A DNA stretch of 64,000 nucleotides, taken from positions 124,001 through 188,000 of IMG/VR virus record IMGVR_UViG_3300033997_000478; one strand, written 5' to 3'. Positions 2,729 to 40,630 of this stretch are shown piece by piece; within the stretch, counting starts at the first letter, position 1, and each line of letters opens with the position of its first letter. The translations under genes and the position numbers were made by a program. The notes beneath the pieces are model-generated. The model searched no databases. It was not told the origin of the DNA and saw only the letters and a program-made list of their open reading frames with translations.

Positions 2729-3400
2729 ATGAAATCCGAATGTGTGGTAGTCAGTAACGGCGGCTCGTTGTTTCTCGTCGGACCGACTGGTAAAACCACC
2801 CCGTTGACTCTACTTGAACGGATCAGATTGGCTCTCACCAATCGGTATCCACAACGCGCCCTGAACGCCGTACAGACCAACGACAAGCTCGGCTGGCTGG
2901 AACCTACCCGACCCACTGTGGAAAACATCAGCCGCAGTGACCAACCCGTTCGTGGTGTGCTGAACATCACCATCGAACAGCTGTCCTGCATCGCTAACCC
3001 GGCGCCTTACCGCGGGGATGTGATGCTTCATGCGTACATGCCAGGTCATCCGCAGTTCGCTGAACGACTGGCCGAAGTCGACGAAGGTAAACCCGATTGT
3101 TGGAAGGCTACCGCGTATTGGTCGGTAGTTGGTGGTGGGGTGCAGATCGAACCGATACTGTTTGTTTTTGTGGCCAAGAGCATCGACCCGACCTTCCACA
3201 CCATGACCGGCCTGGATCACCGGTTCCTGTACTACACCATGGTCGAACTGGCCCGGCAATTTGGCCATGCCTGGAACGCCTCCTCGTCCACCAAGGTCGT
3301 ACTGCAAAACCTCCATCTGGACGGCAGTGAAGTTGACTGCCTTCCCATGAAGCCGCCCAAATCCCTTGATCGTAGTCTCCGCCGCCACGGTCCCCGTTAA
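2729..3400 (+). CDS. Hypothetical protein
   Basis: ATG 2729 follows the upstream stop; GGAGG upstream. Confidence 0.7.
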   Translation: MKSECVVVSNGGSLFLVGPTGKTTPLTLLERIRLALTNRYPQRALNAVQTNDKLGWLEPTRPTVENISRSDQPVRGVLNITIEQLSCIANPAPYRGDVMLHAYMPGHPQFAERLAEVDEGKPDCWKATAYWSVVGGGVQIEPILFVFVAKSIDPTFHTMTGLDHRFLYYTMVELARQFGHAWNASSSTKVVLQNLHLDGSEVDCLPMKPPKSLDRSLRRHGPR

Positions 3401-3421
3401 CCCTCAAGTTCAGAAGAAACC

Positions 3422-4375
3422 ATGAGCAACTTCAACAAGCGCCAGATCCGCACCATGCTGGACAACTCCGCACGCGTGGCCAAACGCTACCGTTCGATCA
3501 CCAACGTCTACCTGACCAACCCGGTGCATGGCCGCCTGTTCTTCCACAACAACATCCACGGCATGGCCATGGTGCAGGTGGTGGATACGCTGGCCAAGAT
3601 GACCGGCAACGTCACCAAGGACGAGCTGGAGCTGCTGCACACTGCCGCTGCATGGCATGACTGCCACCACAGCGGTCACCCGGACAGCTGGCTTGATGAG
3701 AACGGTAAGGACAACATCGATCGCACGATCGAGCAGTACAATCTGTACGTCCAACAGCATCGCCAGGTCTGGAACGCGGCCGTGGTGCGTCTGATCCGTG
3801 GCACCCGCTTCCCGTACGACTACGTGCTGCCGCGCACCACCGGTCCCGAAGCTGATCCGAATGGCCTGACTGAGCGTGAGGTCTTCCTGCTGGGTCTGCT
3901 GCGTGACGCCGACGCAGTGTGGGGCATGCTGCACGAGTACTCGGCCCAGTCCGTGGTTGGTCTGTGGCTGGAGCGCACCCATGCCGGCGAAGAAGAGAAG
4001 AACCCGGACCCGGAAGAAGTCGTGCGTCGTCGCATGGCTTTCCTGAAGAGCGTCAAGCCCTTCACCGCGGCCGGCAAGAACTTCTTCCGCGCTTTCTTGG
4101 ATGAAACCCTGGAAGACACCGAGCGCCTGTATATGGAGATGACCCGCCAGAACCAGCTGGCAGAACTGGTCGGCGACCTCACCCTCGATGAATTGGCCCA
4201 GTACCGTGCCGGCAAGACCATCAACCAGATCCACGCCGCCCGCGCCGCCAAGGCAGCGCCGAAGCAGGGGGAAGAACTGGTCGACCTGGTTCCGACGCTG
4301 GATGCCGAACTGCCGATCAGCGGCATGCCGGTCATCTCGGCCAATGAAATCCTGGAAGCGCACGGCCTGAAGTAA
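3422..4375 (+). CDS. HD-domain metal-dependent phosphohydrolase
   Basis: FHNNIH...AAAWHDCHH...LRDAD gives the H..HD..D signature. Confidence 0.8.
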   Translation: MSNFNKRQIRTMLDNSARVAKRYRSITNVYLTNPVHGRLFFHNNIHGMAMVQVVDTLAKMTGNVTKDELELLHTAAAWHDCHHSGHPDSWLDENGKDNIDRTIEQYNLYVQQHRQVWNAAVVRLIRGTRFPYDYVLPRTTGPEADPNGLTEREVFLLGLLRDADAVWGMLHEYSAQSVVGLWLERTHAGEEEKNPDPEEVVRRRMAFLKSVKPFTAAGKNFFRAFLDETLEDTERLYMEMTRQNQLAELVGDLTLDELAQYRAGKTINQIHAARAAKAAPKQGEELVDLVPTLDAELPISGMPVISANEILEAHGLK

Positions 4376-26855: not shown

Positions 26856-29800
26856 TTAGCCGATCTTGGCGATGCTGCGGGCTACCCAGCGCAGCAGCCC
26901 AGTGACAACCTGATCGATCTGATCTTCGATGTGGTTGTAGTGGGTGTAGCGCCGTTCGAACTCGTGGTGTTCGCACAGTTCGCAGTAGTCATCCAGCAGG
27001 CCAGCCTCATCGAGGTTGCCCCACATCAAGCTACCATCGCTGTGATCAGCGTAGCCGATGACGTTGACGAACTCGACATCACGCTGCTTGTCCACGATCT
27101 CCACGATGAACTGCAGCGCCTTCTCAACGCCAGCCTTGTCCAGTGCCGGCATCAGAGTGGGCGAACGCACCAAACCCTGCTTTTGACGGAACGTGCCATT
27201 GTCGTTGACGACCTTGTCCGGACCCATCAACTGCATCGAGCGACCCAACGCCTTGGCCGGACCTTGACGGTTGAGTACCGCCTTGAACTGGGGAGCGGCC
27301 TTGTTGAACAAGGCATGTACGATGTCTTCGTCGACACCGATCTCCTTGTCGTAGGCGTCAGCCAACTTTGGCTCGAAGCTCTTGTGGATTGCCAGCAGGG
27401 CGTCGCTCTCAGCCTTGATGGCAGCACTGATCGCTTGGCACTGCTTGACCACCTTGTTGGTGTTGTCGATGGTCTTGCCCAACATGACCGCACCATTGCC
27501 CGAGAGCGGACCGCCGTAGGCCAGCTTGTCGTAGATGCCGTCGGCGGCCACCAGGCCGTGTTCGACAAAGCGCGTACCTTCAGGCACCTTCAGGTTCGGG
27601 AACAGCCCTTGGATCAGGTCCTTGACCTTCATGCCGTCAGCGCTGGAGAGATCCCGCAGTTCCGGCTTCTTCGGTTCGGGTGTGGAGAACACCTTGCGTA
27701 CCGACTTGATCAGATCGCCGAAACCTTCCAGCGAGACGCCGAAGGAACTCTCGATTTCCTCGGCCTCCTCACCAGAGATGAAGCCCATGCCCAAGTAGTC
27801 GTTGAGGGCTGCCTCCATGGAGATCACGTGGGGGTCGTCCTCGTAGTCTTCCATCGAGGTGAAGTAACCCTCCAGCGTCTTGGCGGCATCGCCAGAGTAG
27901 TCCGAGCCCATGATCATAGCGACCTGCTGCTTGGACCATTCCAGAATGTCAGCCGAACGGGTGGAGATGTTCGGCTCGTCCCCGGTATCCAGGGTGACGA
28001 ACTGGAACTTCACTGGCGTGTCCTGACCCAGGCGATCGATACGGGCCTTGGCCTGCACCAGTTCATGGTCGCGGAAGGGACTGTTGAGGAAGATCGCAAG
28101 ATCGGCCATCACCAGCGGCACCGCCGTGGACAGGGACGGGTAGGTAGCGCACAGCGGGTCGACACTGGGGTCGGTCTCGAATGCACCCACGTTGGTGGCC
28201 AGATCCTTGTTGGTCTTGCCGTAGACCAGCAACGGCTTCTTGCCCAGCTTGGTCAGTACGTTCTGCAGCTCTTCGACCACCGGCACGTAAGAGGTGAAGA
28301 TCACCGTCTTCTTCTGCGCCTTGTCCATGATCGCATCGAACGGGATGTGCGGCAGCATCTCCAGATGGCAGCGACTGCGTGACTTGCCGACCACCGAACC
28401 CAGGGCCTCGCCCATGACCTTCAGGTGGACGTACTTGATCACCGAGCGGGCGCCCTTGAACGCCTTGCGGTCAGCGATGTTCAACTTCGGCATGATGAAC
28501 TTCAGCTCGAAGTTGTTGCAGAACATCGCCTCTTCCTTCATCTCCTTCGGATCGTAGTACTTCTTGATCTTCTCGATGTAGGTGCGGTAGGTCTTGTAGT
28601 CGCTGCGTTCCTGCGTGGTCGCAATAGCGTCCTCGTAGTCACGCAGGCAGTTCTCGTAGATGTCCTCGTACTTGGAGTAGTTCTTCTTGTAGTACTCCAA
28701 GCGCTCAGCGATGAAGTCCTTCATCTGCTGGCGGATCGAGTCCAGCGTGTAGTCCTCGCCGTTGGGCAACTTGACCTTCACCGTCGGCAGTTCGACCGGC
28801 TTGTTGTCCACCACGTCCTTCTTCTCAACGCGGTAGGAGATAAAGCCCATGCGGTTGCGCAGCACGTCCAGTGCGCGCTTGGCATTGACGCCGAAGATCG
28901 CACGGAAGCCCTTCTCCACGTCCGGAGTGAAGCGCGGATCGATGGTCTTGAGCAGTGGTACACATTCACCACCCAGCGCCTTGATCGGCGTGCCAGAGGA
29001 CCACAGTACGTTCTCGCTCTTGACCCGCTCGCACAGGTCGATGAAGGTCTGCGTACGCTGGGAGGACATCTCGTTGAAGTTGTGCGACTCATCGAGGATG
29101 ACCGTCACCTTGCCGTTGAGCTTGCCGACGTTGGACATCAGGATCGGCAGACCCTCGTAGTGGGTGATCAGGATACGTTCACCCTTGTAGGGCTTCTTCT
29201 CACCAGCGATCCACGGGATCTGCGGCTTGACGTATTCCTCGCGCACGGTCTTGTCCCACACGCGGTAGACCGCATTGTTGGGCGAGACAATGACGATGTA
29301 GTCCGAGTGGACCATCTCAGCCAGGAACAGGTTGGTGAGCGTGTTGTGCGTCACCACGAAGTTGTCGGTAATGTACAGTCGATCAGGGTGGTCGATAGAG
29401 ATGCACTGGCACGGTTCTTCGGAGACTTTCTCAACCTTTACGACGGCAAGTTTGAGGTTTTGCGCGTATTGGTTATCGTCGTTGGTGCGTTCACGCTTCC
29501 GGGCCAGCCTGAAGAGATCACCACCACGCTTGATCCTGACGTTTACCAAATACGAAAGTCGCCCAGCTCGCCGTTCTTCACCGTAGGTATAGTAGGTCTG
29601 TCTGGAAGTTACACTGGCGATGCCGCCCACAGACCAAATCAGGTCCTGTACATCCAGGGCGAGTTTCTCGCTGGTGGTGCAGTACGTGATCGTACCCCCA
29701 CTTACCGTGCCATCTGTATCGAAAAGACCTTGTAGGATCGACAGACGTTGTTGGAGCGACCCGTTCTTGTATTGGTTGGGAATGAATCTTTCGTGAGAAC

Positions 29801-30860
29801 CCAATCCAAACAATCCAAGGTCACGAAGAATTTCAGTGAGGGGGTTCTTCTTCACTGACATGTCGGTGCGGGTGAGACGGTACGTCAGGGCCCGTTCATC
29901 TTTCGTCTGAACCAAGCCCACGCCTTCCGGAAGTAGTGGGGTGATGGTGTCGAAAAGTTCCGCATCATTTTTAGTGATGGCGATCGAACCGCTGGCCGTG
30001 GAGCCATCACCAATCAGTACACCCAGCAAATAAGGATCGACTGGAAGTTGGACCTCACTCCCCGCATCGGGGGTCATCAGATCGATGTGTACTCGATGGC
30101 CTTGCTCCAGGCGATCCTTCATTGCCAGAGTGTCGATAACCTGACAATAGCCGGGACGTTCAGGGCGCTGCCGATTGTCATACACCCGCCACAGGTGTTC
30201 ACCACAGCTACGGGCAGTGCGCCCGTCTTTGAAGGTGATCTCATAGACGTCCTTGACGCCCTGGGGGTACACCCCGGTGATGCGGGTCTCCGAACCGTCC
30301 CACGCGGTAACTACCGAGCCCACTTGAGCCTCACCCATGGTCATCCAACCATCAGGCGTTTTGATGAGTGAACTCAGAGGTTGGGCTTTACCCGAACCGG
30401 CCGCAGCCGAGAGCAGATAGCCATGCAGGCCAAGGGCGGTACGGCCGTACTCGTAGACATCGAAGAACTCCAACTGGTGCTTCATCGGCGTCTTCTTGAA
30501 CAGCTTGAGCTTGGTGCGATCAAAGATGCGCGGGAAGTTTTCCTTATCGGCCAGACCGGCCAACCAGGTATTCTCTTCCATGGCCTTGATCGCGGCCAGG
30601 ATCGTATTGCGCGGTGTCCAGTTGCGGCGCTGCTTGAGCAGCTCCTGGAGCATGTAGTGGATTTCGATGGCGTAGAAGTCACGGAACTTGATCGAGCGCT
30701 TGGACATGTCCAAGAACATGTTGCCCTCGATCTTGCTCGTACCCCATGCGGCCTTGATGTCGCGCATCAGGTTGGCGGCGCCAGCGCCACCAATTTCGAT
30801 TACGTTGTCTTCTTGGGAAACGTAAACGATACCCAACATGCGCTTGAGGAATTGGGACAT
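26856..30860 (-). CDS. SNF2/DExH-family helicase (phiKZ-like, probably virion-associated) with an intein and a C-terminal extension
   Basis: Walker A AAGSGK|T split by the intein; ILDESH; SSGTP; QAKARIDRLGQ (motif VI). Confidence 0.9.
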   Translation of the reverse strand: MSQFLKRMLGIVYVSQEDNVIEIGGAGAANLMRDIKAAWGTSKIEGNMFLDMSKRSIKFRDFYAIEIHYMLQELLKQRRNWTPRNTILAAIKAMEENTWLAGLADKENFPRIFDRTKLKLFKKTPMKHQLEFFDVYEYGRTALGLHGYLLSAAAGSGKAQPLSSLIKTPDGWMTMGEAQVGSVVTAWDGSETRITGVYPQGVKDVYEITFKDGRTARSCGEHLWRVYDNRQRPERPGYCQVIDTLAMKDRLEQGHRVHIDLMTPDAGSEVQLPVDPYLLGVLIGDGSTASGSIAITKNDAELFDTITPLLPEGVGLVQTKDERALTYRLTRTDMSVKKNPLTEILRDLGLFGLGSHERFIPNQYKNGSLQQRLSILQGLFDTDGTVSGGTITYCTTSEKLALDVQDLIWSVGGIASVTSRQTYYTYGEERRAGRLSYLVNVRIKRGGDLFRLARKRERTNDDNQYAQNLKLAVVKVEKVSEEPCQCISIDHPDRLYITDNFVVTHNTLTNLFLAEMVHSDYIVIVSPNNAVYRVWDKTVREEYVKPQIPWIAGEKKPYKGERILITHYEGLPILMSNVGKLNGKVTVILDESHNFNEMSSQRTQTFIDLCERVKSENVLWSSGTPIKALGGECVPLLKTIDPRFTPDVEKGFRAIFGVNAKRALDVLRNRMGFISYRVEKKDVVDNKPVELPTVKVKLPNGEDYTLDSIRQQMKDFIAERLEYYKKNYSKYEDIYENCLRDYEDAIATTQERSDYKTYRTYIEKIKKYYDPKEMKEEAMFCNNFELKFIMPKLNIADRKAFKGARSVIKYVHLKVMGEALGSVVGKSRSRCHLEMLPHIPFDAIMDKAQKKTVIFTSYVPVVEELQNVLTKLGKKPLLVYGKTNKDLATNVGAFETDPSVDPLCATYPSLSTAVPLVMADLAIFLNSPFRDHELVQAKARIDRLGQDTPVKFQFVTLDTGDEPNISTRSADILEWSKQQVAMIMGSDYSGDAAKTLEGYFTSMEDYEDDPHVISMEAALNDYLGMGFISGEEAEEIESSFGVSLEGFGDLIKSVRKVFSTPEPKKPELRDLSSADGMKVKDLIQGLFPNLKVPEGTRFVEHGLVAADGIYDKLAYGGPLSGNGAVMLGKTIDNTNKVVKQCQAISAAIKAESDALLAIHKSFEPKLADAYDKEIGVDEDIVHALFNKAAPQFKAVLNRQGPAKALGRSMQLMGPDKVVNDNGTFRQKQGLVRSPTLMPALDKAGVEKALQFIVEIVDKQRDVEFVNVIGYADHSDGSLMWGNLDEAGLLDDYCELCEHHEFERRYTHYNHIEDQIDQVVTGLLRWVARSIAKIG
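29343..30386 (-). mobile_element. Intein (348 aa), Ala1 class-3 type, with LAGLIDADG endonuclease
   Basis: Starts AQPLSSLIKTPDGW, ends VVTHN|T; HLW, CQC and THN give the WCT triplet; LLGVLIGDG and LQGLFDTDG; different codon usage. Confidence 0.92.
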
Positions 30861-37667: not shown

Positions 37668-37824
37668 AGTTCACCACCAGCTGAAGGGCAGGCTCTTCAG
37701 GACCGGCTTCAATATTGCGCGGATCGCGGAATTTGATTACAAGTCCGAAGACGAAGAGTAATCGGCAGCATAAGAGAGGCTCCCTTCGGGGAGCCTCTCA
37801 GGGATCTTGGTTTTTTCTTTTACC

Positions 37825-38073
37825 TTAGTAGCGGCGCGGGCCCTTAGTGGGTTTTGCTGCCAGCTTATCGTAAGGATAATCTTCCAGGAACCTATCCAAC
37901 TTCAACATCGTCTCAAAACTGCCCAGCGTGACACCCGTGCGCTTCTTCTTGAGCCTGAAGGGATGGTCACTGCCTTTTACGATCACTACTTCGATCAGCG
38001 CTTTCTTTTTCTTAAGCATTCGCAGCTGTTCGGTGGCGGTAAGCACAGGAATGCGTTCGACGGTTTCGGACAT
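37825..38073 (-). CDS. Small basic hypothetical protein
   Basis: GGAG SD on the minus strand; converges on hairpin 37768-37799. Confidence 0.6.
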   Translation of the reverse strand: MSETVERIPVLTATEQLRMLKKKKALIEVVIVKGSDHPFRLKKKRTGVTLGSFETMLKLDRFLEDYPYDKLAAKPTKGPRRY

Positions 38074-38184
38074 GGCACGTGGACTCCAGGGGAAAGGGTT
38101 GCGGTTAGTAGATCTTGCCTACACAGGATTACGTAAATTTTCACGCATGGATAACATCCTGTGGTAGAAGCCCGCTTAAGTCCT

Positions 38185-38398
38185 GACTTGCCGTCTTTTA
38201 CCCCTCGTCCCCCTAAGTGGCCTTTTAAGGCCGATCGCCCCTTCCTTGGCGAACCCTCTTACTTGGTGCGGGACGAGTCCTATTCAAATGACTTCTTAAA
38301 TCGTGGAAGATTGCAGCTCTTTTCAGAGCGCGATCATCGGTGCGTCTGGCAAATCCGGCACCGGCTGGCCCACTACCGTTCCAGGGGACGGGGAAGTC
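38185..38398 (+). ncRNA. Candidate structured ncRNA A (about 215 nt), unknown class
   Basis: Ends pair (GACTT.CCGTCTTTT with AGGGGACGG..AAGTC); internal helices such as CTCGTCCC/GGGACGAG; heads the tRNA cluster. Confidence 0.55.
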
Positions 38399-38409
38399 GC
38401 CTTTTCTGC

Positions 38410-38434
38410 GGACATGTAGCTCAGTTGGTTAGAG
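38410..38434 (+). pseudogene. 5' fragment of a tRNA gene (acceptor 5' strand plus D-arm)
   Basis: GGACATG-TA-GCTCAGTTGGTTAGAG; no matching 3' half seen nearby. Confidence 0.65.
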
Positions 38435-38439
38435 AGAAC

Positions 38440-38856
38440 ATGGGTAATAACTACAACCAGTACATGGCAGGCTACATGAATCGGCGCTATAAGAGACGTC
38501 GAGAGTGGGCTGTGGAATTACTGGGCGGGGTGTGTCGGCACTGCGGGAAGCCCGATGACGGGACTCATGAGTTTGACCACATTAACCCTACCGATAAGTT
38601 GGTGCCCATTGCAAGTCTTTGGTCGGCCAACCTCGAGCTCTTCCTGAACGAACTAGAGTGCTGTCAGCTTTTATGTAAAGCGTGCCACATCGTAAAGACT
38701 AGGAAAGATCTAGGTCAAAATGATGCGCGAATTGTCCACGGCACGCTTTCTAGCTATCGGTACTGTCGCTGCGATGCATGTAGACAAGCCAAAAGTGAAT
38801 GGTCGCGTCAGGCCTACATAAAGCGAAAAGAACAACAGCGACAACACTCACTTTGA
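38440..38856 (+). CDS. HNH (homing) endonuclease
   Basis: CRHCG...EFDHINP...CQLLCKACH, then HGT..Y..CRCDAC. Confidence 0.88.
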   Translation: MGNNYNQYMAGYMNRRYKRRREWAVELLGGVCRHCGKPDDGTHEFDHINPTDKLVPIASLWSANLELFLNELECCQLLCKACHIVKTRKDLGQNDARIVHGTLSSYRYCRCDACRQAKSEWSRQAYIKRKEQQRQHSL

Positions 38857-38866
38857 AAGTTTCACT

Positions 38867-38943
38867 AGGGATGTCGTCAAGTGGTCTAAGACACGGTCTT
38901 TTGATGTCCGCACGCGTAGGTTCGAATCCTGCCATCCCTGCCA
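38867..38943 (+). tRNA. tRNA-Gln (TTG)
   Basis: AGGGATG/CATCCCT acceptor, loop TT-TTG-AT, GGTTCGAATCC, encoded CCA; one anticodon-stem mismatch. Confidence 0.88.
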
Positions 38944-38952
38944 CAGTTTCAA

Positions 38953-39028
38953 GGGTCAGTAGCTCAATAAGGATAGAGCAGCGATCTCTGGTCGTTGGTT
39001 GAAGGTTCGAGTCCTTCTTGACCCGCCA
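38953..39028 (+). tRNA. tRNA-Arg-like gene with a 5-nt anticodon loop (atypical)
   Basis: Intact acceptor, D and T arms and CCA; GCGAT-CTCTG-GTCGT; body resembles tRNA-Arg(UCU). Confidence 0.7.
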
Positions 39029-39038
39029 CAGTTACAAA

Positions 39039-39110
39039 GCCCCCATGATGTACTGGAGCATTCCCGTCTCTAAAAGGACGGGTCGTGAGGTTCGAATCCT
39101 CAAAGGGGCA
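39039..39110 (+). tRNA. Atypical tRNA-like gene with CTA (amber) triplet in an enlarged anticodon loop
   Basis: CCCGT-CTCTAAAAGG-ACGGG; T arm TGAGG-TTCGAAT-CCTCA; 5-bp acceptor with two mismatches; no encoded CCA. Confidence 0.6.
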
Positions 39111-39123
39111 CTCACCTTTCAAT

Positions 39124-39199
39124 ACAGCGTTCGTCTAGCGGTCTAGGATCGCGGCCTTTCACGTCGCTAACACGGGTTCGAATCCCGTACGCTGTACCA
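39124..39199 (+). tRNA. tRNA-Glu (TTC)
   Basis: ACAGCGT/ACGCTGT acceptor, loop CT-TTC-AC, CCA. Confidence 0.93.
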
Positions 39200-39214
39200 C
39201 CTTTCGGAGCCTTC

Positions 39215-39409
39215 ATGAAGTATCCAACGATCTACAAGCTGGAGAATCTGGCAGCCCTTGCGGAGGGCAACGTCAGTAGCTCAGTCGACGGTAAGACCTG
39301 GGTTCCCACCCGTCCCATCGGCTACCCCAGTTGGCGTACGCGCCTGAAGGCTGCATGGCTGGTGCTCACCGGTCGTGCTGATGCGGTTGTCTGGCCGCAG
39401 GGTCAGTAA
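39215..39409 (+). CDS. Small phage hypothetical protein
   Basis: GGAG SD; WVPTRP...RLKAAWLVLTGRADAVVWP. Confidence 0.72.
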   Translation: MKYPTIYKLENLAALAEGNVSSSVDGKTWVPTRPIGYPSWRTRLKAAWLVLTGRADAVVWPQGQ

Positions 39410-39415
39410 GTTTTC

Positions 39416-39492
39416 TGTGGATTAGCTCAGTTGGCTAGAGCGTTCCCCTGATAAGGGAAAGGTCGGTGGTTCGAGTCCACTATCCGCAACCA
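39416..39492 (+). tRNA. tRNA-Ile (GAT)
   Basis: TGTGGAT/ATCCGCA acceptor, TTCCC-CTGATAA-GGGAA, CCA. Confidence 0.93.
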
Positions 39493-39497
39493 GTTCT

Positions 39498-39813
39498 GGG
39501 TCTTGGTGTGATCGGCTGAAGCGTCTGATCCGGAGCGCTGGGGGATTCCCCCGCCACGGATCTTATTCCCCGTGACTTACGGTGTAACGGGGTGTATCTG
39601 TGTCCTGCCTTTCCCCGATTGCGAGTCGGGCTCACAGGCGGGCGAACCGTGCGGTCCCTATCGCGGGGGCAAGTTGTAAGACGTTGTATCAACCGGGAGA
39701 CTTGGCTCTTAACGGAGGGCCGAAGGGTCGTTCGCGGCTAGACCTCGGTTGTTGACGTGTGCAGCCTTTAGTTATCCTCTTTGTCGGTGTGCACCTGACT
39801 GGTCGATAACTAA
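39498..39813 (+). ncRNA. Candidate structured ncRNA B (about 320 nt), unknown class
   Basis: Continuous series of GC/GU helices; no + strand ORF; lies between tRNA-Ile and a terminator. Confidence 0.6.
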
Positions 39814-39842
39814 TGGAAGTACATGAGTTGGAAAGGGGTGTA

Positions 39843-39873
39843 GGAGAGGAGGCTGCAGCCTCCTCTCTTATGC
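39843..39873 (+). terminator. Terminator of the RNA cluster
   Basis: gagaggaggc-TGCA-gcctcctctc followed by TTATGC. Confidence 0.72.
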
Positions 39874-39889
39874 TGTCGATCCAAGTTGG

Positions 39890-39914
39890 ATTGAGGGCTA
39901 TACTATCCCCATGA
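39890..39914 (+). promoter_or_regulatory. Putative phage early promoter (variant)
   Basis: ATTGA-gggcta-TACTAT-cccca-TGA, same spacing as the others. Confidence 0.55.
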
Positions 39915-39973
39915 CAGGGTGCATCAAAAAAGACACCCGAGTATCTTCCTATAGACCAAGAGGAAACCCGCCG

Positions 39974-40630
39974 ATGTTCCAGACTCCCAAGGGCATGTCC
40001 AGCTTCCTGCCCCATTATCTCTACGCTCTGGTTTACTGGATCGAGGAGAACAACTTCGACCCGTACCTGATCGTCAACCGCCAAGCGGAAGGTGTGGAGA
40101 TCCCCACGTCCGTTCCAGGCAATGACGACGGCACGATCGCACTGAACCTGGCCAGTCGTACGCGCGATGCGCAGCACTTCTACTTCACCGAGAACCACTT
40201 CGAGTACAAGACCGCCTTCAACGGCAAGCGTACAGTGGTGAAGGTGCCCTACACTGCGATCTACGCCGTGACAGCCCGTGGCTGTACCGAGTGGGAGGGT
40301 GAGAACGTCATCCACTTGTTGAACCTGCGTGATGGAAAGGTACAACAGATGTACGTAGTGATGGGCCCGCACGAAGAAGCCCCCACCTCATCCGAACTGC
40401 ATCGCATCGGCGAAGCGCTGATGGGCAGTCTCAAGTCGCCAGTGGCGGGCGAACAGCTGGCGGAAGAATTCACCAAGCGTCTGGCTGCAGCACCGCAGGA
40501 AACGCATCCGGACGTCGTCCAACCCACCCAATCCCATGAGTCCCACCCGGACGTCGTGGAAAACACCACCTCCACGGCCGAGCCGGCATCCAACGTCGTC
40601 TACGCCGCCTTCGGAAAAAGGAAGCCCTGA
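39974..40630 (+). CDS. sspB: Stringent starvation protein B homologue (ClpXP adaptor)
   Basis: PHYLYALVYWIEENNFDPYLIVN...GVEIP...DGTIALNLA...AFNG...VKVPYTAIYAVTAR aligns by eye with the E. coli SspB core. Confidence 0.85.
   Translation: MFQTPKGMSSFLPHYLYALVYWIEENNFDPYLIVNRQAEGVEIPTSVPGNDDGTIALNLASRTRDAQHFYFTENHFEYKTAFNGKRTVVKVPYTAIYAVTARGCTEWEGENVIHLLNLRDGKVQQMYVVMGPHEEAPTSSELHRIGEALMGSLKSPVAGEQLAEEFTKRLAAAPQETHPDVVQPTQSHESHPDVVENTTSTAEPASNVVYAAFGKRKP

What the first reader, a model, noticed from the sequence alone, without database searches (positions are those of the whole stretch)
39498..39813. About 320-nt structured RNA directly after tRNA-Ile
Seen: it starts 5 nt after the tRNA-Ile CCA and stops before a terminator. 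Domain 1 (39498-39563) is closed by GGGTCTTGGTG / CGCCA-c-GGATCT with a bulged C. It holds the hairpin GATCGG/CTGATC, whose loop AGCGT can pair with downstream GCGCT (pseudoknot), and a GGGG/CCCC hairpin. Then CCCCGT/ACGGGG, CCTGCCT/AGGCGGG enclosing CCCGAT/GTCGGG, GGCTCT/AGGGCC, GGTC/GACC, GGTTGT/GCAGCC and TTAGTTATC/GATAACTAA. Known: large phage ncRNAs and tRNA-associated HDV-like ribozymes occur in tRNA clusters. I could not fit this one to any of them by eye.
Basis: partly seen in the sequence, partly recalled or inferred. Interest (0 to 1): 0.65.

Follow-up and report, generated by a model that had tools for sequence, protein, structure and literature searches.

The report
New structured RNA in jumbo phage
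The stretch after tRNA-Ile is the well-conserved 3' part of a large, intricately folded non-coding RNA found so far only in a small group of Xanthomonas-type nucleus-forming jumbo phages; it fits no catalogued RNA family and its job is still unknown.

Summary
Window 39498 to about 39875 (+ strand) is a real structured non-coding RNA. The window is part of a 324-kb PhiKZ-like jumbo phage.

- **Relatives:** homologous non-coding stretches lie in Xanthomonas phages LucasX and RTH11, in one IMG/VR phage and in three metagenome contigs. In those relatives the RNA is about 690 nt. It has its own AT-rich upstream box and a phage-type terminator hairpin, and no tRNA lies nearby.
- **Covariation:** 26 pairs of the 3' module are 98.5% paired, 12 of them with changes on both sides. 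Fifty-two hand-aligned positions of the 5' module are 99.3% paired, 21 with changes on both sides. These include a pseudoknot with a U.G to G-C swap.
- **Strand:** G.U pairs far outnumber A.C (25 to 2), which points to + strand RNA.
- **Expression:** two independent metatranscriptomes hold contigs of the RNA only, not of the flanking genes.
- **Constraint:** between two close strains the RNA differs by 1%, the neighbouring genes by 9-32%.
- **Families:** Rfam 15 gives no match, including GOLLD, ROOL, HDV-like ribozymes and tmRNA.
- **tRNA link:** in this lineage an HNH-tRNA block sits inside the RNA gene, so the tRNA adjacency is secondary.

Function is unknown. Most likely it is a trans-acting folded RNA.

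The parts
38128..38175 (+). Conserved AT-rich box plus UGUGGU-GAAGCC motif. In relatives it marks the 5' border of the RNA gene and may be an early-type promoter and transcript start. It lies directly after the divergent 82-aa gene (37825-38073, minus strand).
   Evidence: BLAST of window 38075-38445 against the kin loci aligns only this box. The sequence is read. About six boxes of the form TACGT-W5-7-AC occur in the genome. The promoter role is inferred.
38176..38416 (+). Lineage-specific non-coding leader in the place of the relatives' 5' domain. No sequence similarity to that domain. It holds a hairpin, 38309-38314 with 38330-38335.
   Evidence: No BLAST or nhmmer match of the kin 5' domains anywhere in the genome. 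In run X5, A38310G and T38334C together turn an A-U pair into G-C.
38417..39492 (+). Inserted mosaic block: a 5' tRNA fragment (38417-38439), an HNH endonuclease (38440-38856), tRNA-Gln, tRNA-Arg, an odd tRNA-like gene, tRNA-Glu, a 64-aa ORF (39215-39409) and tRNA-Ile (39416-39492).
   Evidence: ARAGORN and Rfam. HNH by Pfam and PHROGs. The block is absent from the homologous loci of LucasX, RTH11 and L006. A relative in run X5 lacks 38461-39195.
39498..39563 (+). Domain 1 (D1). The closing helix is 39498-39508 with 39552-39563 (bulged C at 39557). It encloses hairpins 39510-39530 and 39540-39552.
   Evidence: The helix is present. A closing helix at the same place upstream of the UUAC linker is seen in all lineages, with both-side changes at 3 of 5 positions. 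The interior is variable between lineages.
39564..39596 (+). H1 hairpin (39568-73 with 39587-92) carrying the conserved loop ACUUACGGUG.
   Evidence: Both-side changes at 3 of 6 positions. In a metatranscriptome, C39588T gives G.U.
39604..39642 (+). H2 (39604-10 with 39636-42) enclosing H3 (39614-19 with 39625-30). The H3 loop is UGCGA (39620-24).
   Evidence: H2 has 6 of 8 and H3 has 4 of 6 positions with both-side changes. RTH11 and L006 differ by three compensatory pairs in the 4-bp H3, between identical flanks.
39646..39651 (+). 3' strand of pseudoknot PK1 (AACCGUG linker). It pairs with the H1 loop at 39578-39583.
   Evidence: Six pairs. U.G becomes G-C in L006, L008 and L009 by changes on both sides.
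39654..39678 (+). H4 (39654-58 with 39666-70). Its loop UCGCG (39661-65) is complementary to the H3 loop. The invariant AAGUUGUA (39671-78) follows.
   Evidence: H4 has 4 positions with both-side changes and is 100% paired. The loop-loop complementarity is kept in all lineages (U-A or U.G), but there is no covariation, so the contact is inferred.
39683..39754 (+). Variable domain, 72 nt here and 125-185 nt in relatives. It holds the conserved hairpin H5 (39704-09 with 39716-21), the hairpin 39726-29 with 39741-44, and a probable closing helix 39690-95 with 39746-51.
   Evidence: H5 is kept in all lineages. The closing helix in relatives has 2 both-side changes. The window equivalent was found by eye only.
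39755..39841 (+). Long H6 stem. Invariant ACGUGUGCAGCC (39755-66) probably pairs with GG-AAGUACAU (39815-25). The outer helix is 39768-76 with 39805-13, the inner helix 39783-87 with 39795-99. The invariant purine-rich GGAAAGGGGUGU (39830-41) follows.
   Evidence: the outer helix has 6 of 9 pairs with both-side changes; the inner helix has 1 of 5. The pairing of the invariant blocks was predicted by RNAalifold on the kin.
39842..39879 (+). H7, a GC-rich 12-bp hairpin (39842-53 with 39858-69), followed by the conserved CUCUUAUGCUGUCGA. It is a phage-type terminator and the probable 3' end.
   Evidence: 5 of 12 pairs have both-side changes. Hairpin plus CTCTTATGC occurs 5 times in the genome, at gene ends. 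The generic scan does not call it a canonical U-tract terminator.
39893..39906 (+). Promoter-like box (GGCTATACTATCC) for the downstream SspB-like gene (probable start 39974). Not part of the RNA.
   Evidence: The CCCTTACTATC-type box recurs before genes in this genome and stands at the same place in LucasX, RTH11 and L006. SspB assignment.

Best explanation
**What it is.** Window 39498 to about 39875 (+ strand) is the conserved 3' part, about 380 nt, of a clade-specific large structured non-coding RNA gene.

**In the relatives.** In LucasX, RTH11 and an IMG/VR phage the gene is one uninterrupted unit of about 690 nt. It lies between a divergent 80-aa gene and the operon that holds an SspB-like gene. 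An AT-rich box stands at its 5' border and a phage-type terminator hairpin at its 3' end.

**In the window's lineage.** A mosaic mobile block sits between the gene's 5' leader and this 3' part. The block holds a tRNA fragment, an HNH endonuclease, five tRNA genes and a 64-aa ORF. The RNA is therefore most likely made as the tail of the tRNA transcript and released when tRNA-Ile is matured.

**Fold.**
- a helix-closed domain (D1)
- a compact core of four helices, locked by a loop-linker pseudoknot and probably by a loop-loop contact
- a variable domain
- a long stem built partly from invariant sequence
- a single-stranded purine-rich block
- a terminal hairpin

**How it most likely works.** It acts in trans as a folded RNA, either as a scaffold for a protein or as an RNA-only assembly. 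It is probably not a tRNA-processing ribozyme or an mRNA leader.

**Shown:** homology, covariation, strand, presence in RNA libraries, purifying selection, and absence from known families.

**Inferred:** the promoter, co-transcription with the tRNAs, release by tRNA processing, and trans action.
For: **Identity of the phage.** It is a 324-kb phage with terminal repeats. Its helicase is 61-65% identical to those of LucasX and RTH11 and about 42% identical to those of PhiPA3-type phages.

**Homology.** The RNA matches unannotated gaps upstream of the SspB-like gene in LucasX and RTH11. It also matches IMG/VR locus L006 and metagenome loci L008-L010.

**Covariation.**
- 3' module: 98.5% of cells paired and 12 of 26 pairs changed on both sides. 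No shuffle of 500 reached this. With partners slid by 1-3 columns the figures fall to 31-52% paired and 0-1 pairs.
- 5' module, hand-aligned: 52 positions, 99.3% paired, 21 changed on both sides; slid partners give 30-45%.
- The automatic alignment of the 5' module still gives 84.8% paired against 34-45% when slid, and shows the pseudoknot swap.
- RNAalifold on the full-length relatives predicts 170 pairs, 27 of them with compensatory change.

**Strand.** 25 G.U cells against 2 A.C cells.

**Expression.** Metatranscriptome contigs cover 39530-39729 (0 differences) and 39541-39699 (1 difference, which keeps the pair). They come from two studies, and neither study has a contig on the flanking genes.

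**Constraint.** Between the window and L010 the RNA differs by 1.0%, the SspB gene by 9.3%, the 64-aa ORF by 8.8% and the next gene by 32%.

**Coding.** No ORF of 60 aa or more on the + strand. Indels between lineages are not multiples of three.

**Insertion.** The 5' box is retained at 38128-38175. The kin loci hold no tRNA. A strain in run X5 lacks the HNH gene and four tRNAs.

**Unit boundaries.** The terminator-type motif and the following promoter-type box both recur in the genome.
Against: - There are only four independent lineages. The other copies are near-identical strains, so the statistics are descriptive. The 5' module helices were assigned by hand.
- The RNA evidence comes from contigs only. 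It gives no strand, no ends and no level, and DNA carry-over cannot be fully excluded. The contigs cover only 39530-39729.
- The window copy lacks a recognisable homologue of the relatives' 5' domain. It may therefore work differently or only in part.
- No transcription start or end is mapped. The hairpin lacks a U-tract.
- In L006 a gene follows the hairpin without a promoter box of its own, so read-through, and with it a cis role, is possible.
- No partner protein was identified. The conserved neighbour P0003 has no family match and no credible fold match.
Confidence: 0.6

Rival explanations
1. It is a cis-acting leader or attenuator. The folded RNA would control whether transcription reads through the terminal hairpin into the downstream operon (small ORFs and the SspB-like gene).
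For: The position upstream of the SspB-like operon is constant in all lineages. The RNA ends in a hairpin. In L006 a 200-aa gene follows the hairpin directly, with no promoter-type box between them. A 6-codon mini-ORF ends at the foot of the hairpin in three lineages (read).
Against: A recurring promoter-type box lies between the hairpin and the next gene in the window, LucasX and RTH11. About 690 nt with multiple domains and a pseudoknot is far larger than known leaders. The mini-ORF has no AUG in LucasX. Metatranscriptome contigs cover the RNA but not the downstream gene. In nucleus-forming phages transcription and translation are separated (PMC13282480), which argues against ribosome-coupled attenuation.
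Confidence: 0.12
2. It is a non-functional relic: decayed tRNA genes, or the dying remainder of an RNA gene disrupted by the HNH-tRNA block.
For: The first 18 nt of domain 1 resemble the 5' part of the tRNA-Ser that follows tRNA-Ile in RTH11. The window copy lacks the relatives' 5' domain. The tRNA region is highly mosaic.
Against: The RNA differs by 1% between the window and L010, against 9-32% in the adjacent genes. All helices are intact, and strain variants keep the pairs. L010 keeps domain 1 without tRNA-Ile upstream. Neither ARAGORN nor the Rfam tRNA model sees a tRNA in domain 1. A helix-closed domain lies at the same place in relatives that have no tRNA nearby. The RNA is present in RNA libraries.
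Confidence: 0.05
3. It is a self-cleaving ribozyme (HDV-like or theta type, or another class) that cuts just after tRNA-Ile to make the tRNA 3' end.
For: It starts 5 nt after the CCA. Domain 1 is compact and may hold a pseudoknot. Such ribozymes are known behind phage tRNAs (own knowledge; not checked in a paper here).
Against: No match to any ribozyme family in Rfam 15, even at E<=10. The helix order of domain 1 does not allow the P1/P2/P3/P1.1/P4 nesting (read). The same domain stands behind an ORF in L010 and behind a 5' RNA domain in the relatives. The interior of domain 1 is the least conserved part.
Confidence: 0.03
4. It is a DNA-level element, such as an origin, a packaging site or a protein-binding array, rather than an RNA.
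For: It is a large non-coding gap between divergent transcription units, rich in inverted repeats.
Against: Helices are kept through G.U pairs, which have no equivalent in DNA or on the other strand: 25 G.U against 2 A.C. A pseudoknot covaries. Contigs in metatranscriptomes are restricted to the element. The fold of the minus strand is weaker, at -129.9 against -170.5 kcal/mol.
Confidence: 0.02
5. It is a divergent or two-piece tmRNA-like RNA that works with the neighbouring SspB-like adaptor.
For: SspB is the adaptor for ssrA-tagged proteins (established knowledge), and an SspB-like gene is the constant downstream neighbour. An open frame starting at the invariant GCA GCC runs about 21-27 codons in three lineages (read).
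Against: ARAGORN finds no tmRNA in the window or in the kin loci. No tmRNA family of Rfam matches at E<=10. There is no acceptor or T-arm module. The frame lies inside the covarying H6 stem, and its peptide is not conserved.
Confidence: 0.02

Closest known systems
GOLLD RNA (Rfam RF01998)
   Same: A large (several hundred nt), multi-domain, pseudoknotted RNA of unknown function encoded by phages, often next to tRNA genes. [quoted passage not shown] The RNA here shows the same pattern of conservation, and in the window it sits behind a tRNA.
   Different: The Rfam model gives no match to the window copy or to the full-length relatives at E<=10. The hosts and phage type differ: this is a nucleus-forming jumbo phage of a Xanthomonas-type host. 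In three of four lineages no tRNA is nearby. Self-assembly is untested.
ROOL RNA (Rfam RF03087)
   Same: A phage or prophage-encoded ornate RNA near tRNA islands, highly abundant, with no known protein partner. Conserved kissing loops later proved to be intermolecular (PMC12286853). Here two invariant loops (UGCGA and UCGCA) are complementary and could act within one molecule or between molecules.
   Different: No sequence or structure match. The architecture is different. Abundance and oligomer state are unknown.
Phage T4 stable RNAs C and D (species 1 and 2) of the tRNA cluster
   Same: Small stable RNAs of unknown function that are co-transcribed with phage tRNAs and released by tRNA processing (own knowledge, not checked in a paper here). 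That is the way the window copy is probably produced.
   Different: The T4 RNAs are about 120-140 nt and unrelated in sequence. Here the tRNA linkage is secondary, and the ancestral gene is an independent unit.
HDV-like (theta-type) ribozymes behind phage tRNAs
   Same: The position immediately 3' of a phage tRNA.
   Different: No model match and no nested double pseudoknot. The position is not conserved among homologues.
Short sRNAs of PhiKZ and 201phi2-1 (for example sRNA005 upstream of the tail gene)
   Same: Non-coding RNAs of chimalliviruses that are conserved by genomic position (PMC11512511).
   Different: Those are shorter than 250 nt, derive from 5' UTRs by early termination, and have simple hairpin folds. 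Covariance models of the present RNA find nothing credible in PhiPA3, SL2, BUCT660, Noxifer or FishSpeaker.

Membership tests
HDV-like / theta ribozyme | Match to a covariance model of the family (nested double pseudoknot P1-P1.1-P2-P3-P4 with a catalytic C) | tested here: not met
   cmscan of Rfam 15 over 38700-40100 at E<=10 gives no ribozyme family. The helix order in domain 1, read, does not allow the nesting.
HDV-like / theta ribozyme | Conserved placement directly 3' of a tRNA, so that cleavage makes the tRNA 3' end | tested here: not met
   L010 has an ORF upstream of the same domain. LucasX, RTH11, L006 and L009 have no tRNA in the locus.
HDV-like / theta ribozyme | Self-cleavage in vitro | not testable with these tools
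   Needs transcription of 39416-39600 and a cleavage assay.
GOLLD / ROOL (large ornate phage RNAs) | Match to the family covariance model | tested here: not met
   No match at E<=10 on the window copy or on the full-length RNAs of RTH11 and LucasX. No match at E<=1 on L006 and L004.
GOLLD / ROOL (large ornate phage RNAs) | Phage-encoded, several hundred nt, multi-domain, with pseudoknots supported by covariation | tested here: met
   About 690 nt in relatives and about 380 nt here. Helices and a pseudoknot covary.
GOLLD / ROOL (large ornate phage RNAs) | Homo-oligomeric RNA-only assembly | not testable with these tools
   Needs native gels, SEC-MALS or cryo-EM.
tRNA or tRNA-like element (domain 1) | Cloverleaf recognised by ARAGORN or by the Rfam tRNA model | tested here: not met
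   Neither tool calls 39498-39563. The likeness to RTH11 tRNA-Ser is limited to about 18 nt.
tmRNA (one- or two-piece) | tRNA-like domain plus tag reading frame; match to the ARAGORN or Rfam tmRNA models | tested here: not met
   Searches find none.
Intrinsic terminator (hairpin 39842-39869) | GC-rich stem followed by a U-tract | tested here: inconclusive
   A 12-bp GC-rich stem is present, but the tail is CUCUUAUGC and the generic scan does not call it. The same hairpin-plus-tail motif recurs 5 times at gene ends in this genome. Sequence-motif terminators are described for PhiKZ-type phages (PMC10914365).
Protein-coding gene | Conserved open reading frame | tested here: not met
   The longest + strand ORF is 51 aa and is not shared. 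Indels between lineages break frames. Substitutions are compensatory in helices rather than falling at third positions.

The most novel reading that the evidence does not exclude
This would be a previously unrecognised class of large 'ornate' RNA specific to a clade of nucleus-forming jumbo phages. It would be made from an early-type promoter right at the start of infection. It would work as an RNA machine or as a self-assembling particle, through its invariant loops and single-stranded blocks. On this reading its gene tolerates being split by a tRNA cassette, so that in the window's lineage the RNA functions as a shortened or two-piece molecule released by tRNA processing.
Probability: 0.2. 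Interest if true: 0.8.

Novelty: new variant of a known kind. Interest (0 to 1): 0.62.

Why it matters
Large structured RNAs with strong covariation and no known function are rare. Each one found so far (OLE, GOLLD, ROOL, raiA) has opened new biology.

None has been described for chimalliviruses. These phages wall off their DNA in a protein nucleus and separate transcription from translation. An abundant folded RNA in such a phage could act in host takeover, in RNA traffic or in defence evasion.

Two cultured phages, LucasX and RTH11, carry the full-length gene, so the RNA can be tested directly.

The window copy adds a natural experiment. An HNH-tRNA cassette has landed between two domains of the RNA gene, yet the 3' part stays under strong selection. 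That marks a domain boundary and shows that the 3' 380 nt carry function of their own.

Tried and rejected
**Searches for more relatives**
- BLAST of the window stretch against 50,697 phage records found only tRNA matches. Homology appeared only after going through the neighbouring SspB-like gene.
- The search for related loci with the SspB-like protein found no new locus. With the 82-aa neighbour family it returned only the IMG/VR record that holds L006.
- An exact 34-nt pattern from domain 1 found nothing in IMG/VR.
- One IMG/VR pattern for the 5' box was mis-specified and wasted.
- The other pattern scans returned only L006 and three metagenome contigs.
- The scan of genome contigs found nothing.
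- Covariance models R1 and R2 found nothing credible in five other chimalliviruses; the best E-value was 0.016, on a hairpin only. This does not prove absence there.

**Ideas tested and dropped**
- The relatives' 5' domain has no detectable copy anywhere in this genome.
- Domain 1 as a tRNA-Ser remnant was dropped after L010 and the kin comparison.
- The tmRNA idea was rejected.
- The leader-peptide idea (MSWKGV / MGRKGV before the hairpin) was dropped because LucasX has no AUG there.

**The 82-aa neighbour P0003 as an RNA-binding partner**
- It has no Pfam or PHROG family.
- The protein atlas gave nothing.
- The AlphaFold model has mean pLDDT 73 and an alpha-beta3-alpha order.
- Foldseek hits to HicB-like proteins and dsRBDs all have E>0.2.
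- VIA-align gave Z<=4.
- Together this gives no support and no verdict.

**Other**
- MAFFT misaligned the 5' module. The covariance-model realignment kept the error for the window rows, so those helices were aligned by hand from coordinates.
- The supplement of the 2023 catalogue of viral structured RNAs is not held, so I could not check whether this motif is listed there.
Full report
**Setting.** The window is bases 124001-188000 of a 324,428-bp virus record with direct terminal repeats. GC content is 58%, and all five tRNA genes of the genome lie in one cluster. Its large SNF2-type helicase is 61-65% identical to those of Xanthomonas phages vB_XciM_LucasX and RTH11, and about 42% identical to those of PhiPA3 and PhiKZ-type phages. 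The phage is therefore a PhiKZ-like, nucleus-forming type of jumbo phage, in a small clade with two cultured Xanthomonas phages.

**The observation.** tRNA-Ile(GAU) occupies 39416-39492 and ends in an encoded CCA. No + strand ORF longer than 51 aa lies between it and the next gene. That gene is SspB-like, with its probable start at 39974. Rfam 15 gives nothing but tRNAs, both at gathering scores and at E<=10.

Folding energy alone is weak evidence. For 39493-39820 the z-score against dinucleotide shuffles is -1.5. With the terminal GC hairpin included it is -4.1, and the minus strand folds less well.

**Finding relatives.** DNA searches with the stretch itself returned only tRNA hits. The downstream SspB-like protein led to LucasX and RTH11. 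In both, the gene is preceded by an unannotated gap of about 800 nt, which begins next to a divergent 80-aa gene. A sensitive BLAST showed that window 39574-39688 and 39755-39914 match these gaps.

Pattern scans built from the invariant blocks added several loci:
- IMG/VR record UViG_3300011559 (L006)
- two metagenome contigs close to L006 (L008, L009)
- one metagenome contig nearly identical to the window (L010)

That makes four independent lineages: window/L010, LucasX, RTH11 and L006/L008/L009. Nothing turned up in 185,579 prokaryote genomes. Covariance models of the two modules found nothing credible in five other chimalliviruses.

**Structure and covariation, 3' module.** For window 39745-39882 the MAFFT alignment is unambiguous. 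Three helices make 26 pairs:
- 98.5% of cells are paired.
- 12 pairs show changes on both sides.
- None of 500 column shuffles reaches this.
- Sliding the partners by 1-3 columns drops pairing to 31-52% and compensatory pairs to 0-1.

**Structure and covariation, 5' module.** MAFFT and the model-based realignment mis-register the window rows. I therefore set the helix strands by coordinates in each sequence, anchored on the invariant flanks. Over 52 aligned pair positions:
- 99.3% of 274 cells are paired.
- 21 positions changed on both sides.
- Slid partners give 30-45%.

The helices were chosen by eye, so this count is biased upward. The automatic alignment nevertheless still gives 84.8% paired against 34-45% when slid.

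The cleanest single cases are these:
- H3 differs between RTH11 and L006 at three of its four pairs, all compensatory, while the flanks are identical.
- In the pseudoknot between the H1 loop (ACUUACGGUG) and the AACCGUG linker, U.G becomes G-C in L006 through changes on both sides.

G.U cells outnumber A.C cells 25 to 2, which fits RNA read from the + strand.

**Wider architecture.** The loops of H3 (UGCGA) and H4 (UCGCA; UCGCG in the window) are complementary in every lineage. They are invariant, so the contact is only inferred. RNAalifold on the full-length relatives predicts 170 pairs, 27 of them with compensatory change. It adds three features:
- a helix that closes the 5' domain
- a helix that closes the variable domain
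- pairing of the invariant ACGUGUGCAGCC block with the invariant GGG-AAGUACAU block, at the base of the long H6 stem

- *Supported by covariation:* the domain 1 closing helix, H1, H2, H3 and H6.
- *Conserved, one-sided changes only:* H5.
- *Lineage-specific but kept by a strain variant:* GGTC/GACC.
- *Cannot be tested:* the two inner hairpins of domain 1 and the proposed small pseudoknot.
- *Not supported:* GGTTGT/GCAGCC.

The purine-rich block 39814-39841 and the hairpin 39842-39869 are conserved, and the hairpin covaries at 5 of its 12 pairs.

**Boundaries.** Homology between the window and L010 begins at 39497, although L010 has an ORF there instead of tRNA-Ile. The hairpin followed by CTCTTATGC recurs five times in the genome at gene ends, for example just downstream of the divergent 82-aa gene. 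It is therefore the terminator type of this phage, although the generic U-tract scan does not call it. Sequence-motif terminators are known in PhiKZ-type phages.

A promoter-type box (CCCTTACTATC class) recurs before genes and stands between the hairpin and the next gene. In L006 an extra 200-aa gene lies between the hairpin and that box.

At the 5' side the relatives share an AT-rich box followed by GUGAUGAUGUGGUGAAGGCCG. The window keeps a recognisable copy at 38128-38175, right after its own copy of the divergent small gene. About six similar AT-rich boxes exist in the genome. PhiKZ-type early promoters are AT-rich. The promoter assignment is nevertheless an inference.

**History of the locus.** In the relatives the RNA gene is one piece of about 690 nt, with no tRNA within the loci I fetched. 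RTH11 keeps its tRNA cluster 25 kb away.

In the window the order is:
- the 5' box
- 240 nt of unrelated but partly structured leader, where one hairpin shows a compensatory change in a strain
- a 5' tRNA fragment abutting an HNH endonuclease gene
- four tRNA genes
- a 64-aa ORF
- tRNA-Ile
- the RNA, starting from domain 1

One environmental strain lacks the HNH gene and the four tRNAs (the joint 38460 to 39196 in run X5). L010 and X5 carry other genes in front of domain 1. So a mosaic, HNH-associated tRNA block occupies the linker between the 5' domain and domain 1 of the RNA gene. The relatives' 5' domain has no detectable copy in this genome.

The resemblance of the first 18 nt of domain 1 to RTH11 tRNA-Ser is best read as chance or as a recombination scar. 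The relatives have a helix-closed domain at the same place without any tRNA.

**Expression and constraint.** Words of the stretch occur in runs from 13 studies. Two metatranscriptomes from different studies hold contigs at 39530-39729 (identical) and at 39541-39699. The second has one change, C39588T, which turns a G-C pair into G.U. Neither has a contig of this phage on the 1.1 kb of genes upstream or on the SspB-like gene downstream. DNA-type runs, in contrast, cover both the RNA and its flanks.

Contigs cannot give strand, ends or level. Still, this pattern is what an abundant, stable RNA would give. Between the window and L010 the RNA differs at 4 of 383 positions (1.0%). The SspB-like gene differs by 9.3%, mostly at third codon positions, the 64-aa ORF by 8.8% and the next gene by 32%. 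The 3' part is thus under stronger constraint than its coding neighbours, which rules out a decaying relic.

**Function.** Nothing points to a known activity. There is no ribozyme, riboswitch, tmRNA, RNase P, GOLLD or ROOL model match on the window copy or on the full-length relatives.

The constant neighbours are an 82-aa basic protein without family or credible fold match and, downstream, the SspB-like operon. The separate promoter and terminator signals, the size, the multi-domain fold with a pseudoknot, the invariant loops and the RNA-only signal in metatranscriptomes make a trans-acting folded RNA the best reading. It would be a protein scaffold or an RNA-only assembly. A leader of the downstream operon is the main rival.

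In the window's lineage the RNA would be transcribed with the tRNAs and freed by maturation of tRNA-Ile. Phage T4 is thought to make its small stable RNAs in the same way (own knowledge).

**Comparison and novelty.** The closest known things are GOLLD and ROOL. These are large ornate phage RNAs of unknown function near tRNA islands. GOLLD has a conserved 3' region and a variable 5' region, and both assemble through kissing loops. The present RNA resembles them in kind but fails the membership test by covariance model, and it has a different architecture. Short sRNAs are known in PhiKZ and 201phi2-1. In the papers I searched, no large structured RNA has been described for chimalliviruses. I file it as a new family of a known kind.

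**Limits.**
- There are four lineages only.
- Part of the helix assignment was made by hand.
- No ends are mapped.
- No function is known.
- The 2023 catalogue of candidate viral structured RNAs could not be checked.

Noticed in passing
window 39039-39111: A tRNA-like gene between tRNA-Arg and tRNA-Glu. ARAGORN reports a four-base anticodon (UAAA) in an 8-nt anticodon loop (UCUAAAAG). The Rfam tRNA score is 24 bits, below threshold. It could be a frameshift or suppressor-type tRNA, or a degenerate one.
   Followed up: no
window 38417-38856: A 5' half of a tRNA (acceptor and D arm) abuts the ATG (38440) of an HNH endonuclease gene. The listed 231-aa ORF 38161-38856 is an over-extension, since matches to HNH proteins start around residue 95. 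This looks like a tRNA gene cut by the homing endonuclease block.
   Followed up: partly
window 38461-39195 (run X5): A contig from an indoor metagenome joins 38460 directly to 39196. That relative therefore lacks the HNH gene and four of the tRNAs. The tRNA set of this phage lineage differs between strains.
   Followed up: partly
L010 (minus strand) 1987-1620: In the near-identical metagenome relative, tRNA-Ile is replaced by three things: a second small ORF; a tRNA(CAU) whose 5' part is like the window's tRNA-Ile and whose 3' part is like RTH11 tRNA-Met; and an ORF of about 90 aa with a twin-arginine-like N-terminus that runs 26 nt into domain 1 of the RNA.
   Followed up: no
L003 (RTH11 tRNA cluster) 3177-3490 and 3677-3990: RTH11 has a 314-nt gap without ORF or tRNA between tRNA-Met and tRNA-His, with long-range complementarity at its ends. 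It also has several tRNA-like stretches with insertions that ARAGORN skips (weak tmRNA and YrlA-like Rfam hits). More unannotated RNAs or intron-bearing tRNAs may lie there.
   Followed up: no
whole genome; window 37746-37790, 39842-39877 and others: Two recurring signals. A GC hairpin followed by CTCTTATGC occurs five times at gene ends (terminator type). A CCCTTACTATC box behind an AT-rich stretch occurs about seven times before genes (promoter type).
   Followed up: partly
window 39870-39892: The 10 nt after the terminal hairpin (AUGCUGUCGA) are conserved in all lineages. RNAalifold pairs them with a segment inside domain 1 (window 39510-14 with 39876-80). If that is real, the RNA extends past the hairpin. 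The window also has a palindrome, ATCCAAGTTGGAT, here, just before the promoter-type box.
   Followed up: no
window 39823-39843: A six-codon mini-ORF (MSWKGV here, MGRKGV in RTH11 and L006) ends at the foot of the terminal hairpin. LucasX has no AUG there, so it is probably chance.
   Followed up: yes
window 26856-30860 (minus strand): The 1334-aa SNF2/DarB-like helicase aligns to the LucasX and RTH11 genes in two pieces that cover only about half of it. This suggests an inserted domain or an intein-like element in one of them.
   Followed up: no
(runs X9, X10, X16, X17): More than half of the sampled words of the RNA occur in runs labelled with single organisms (coded A, B, C), as well as in soil, root, indoor, wastewater, bioreactor and gut metagenomes. 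Close relatives of this phage are widespread, and some may travel with cultured isolates.
   Followed up: no
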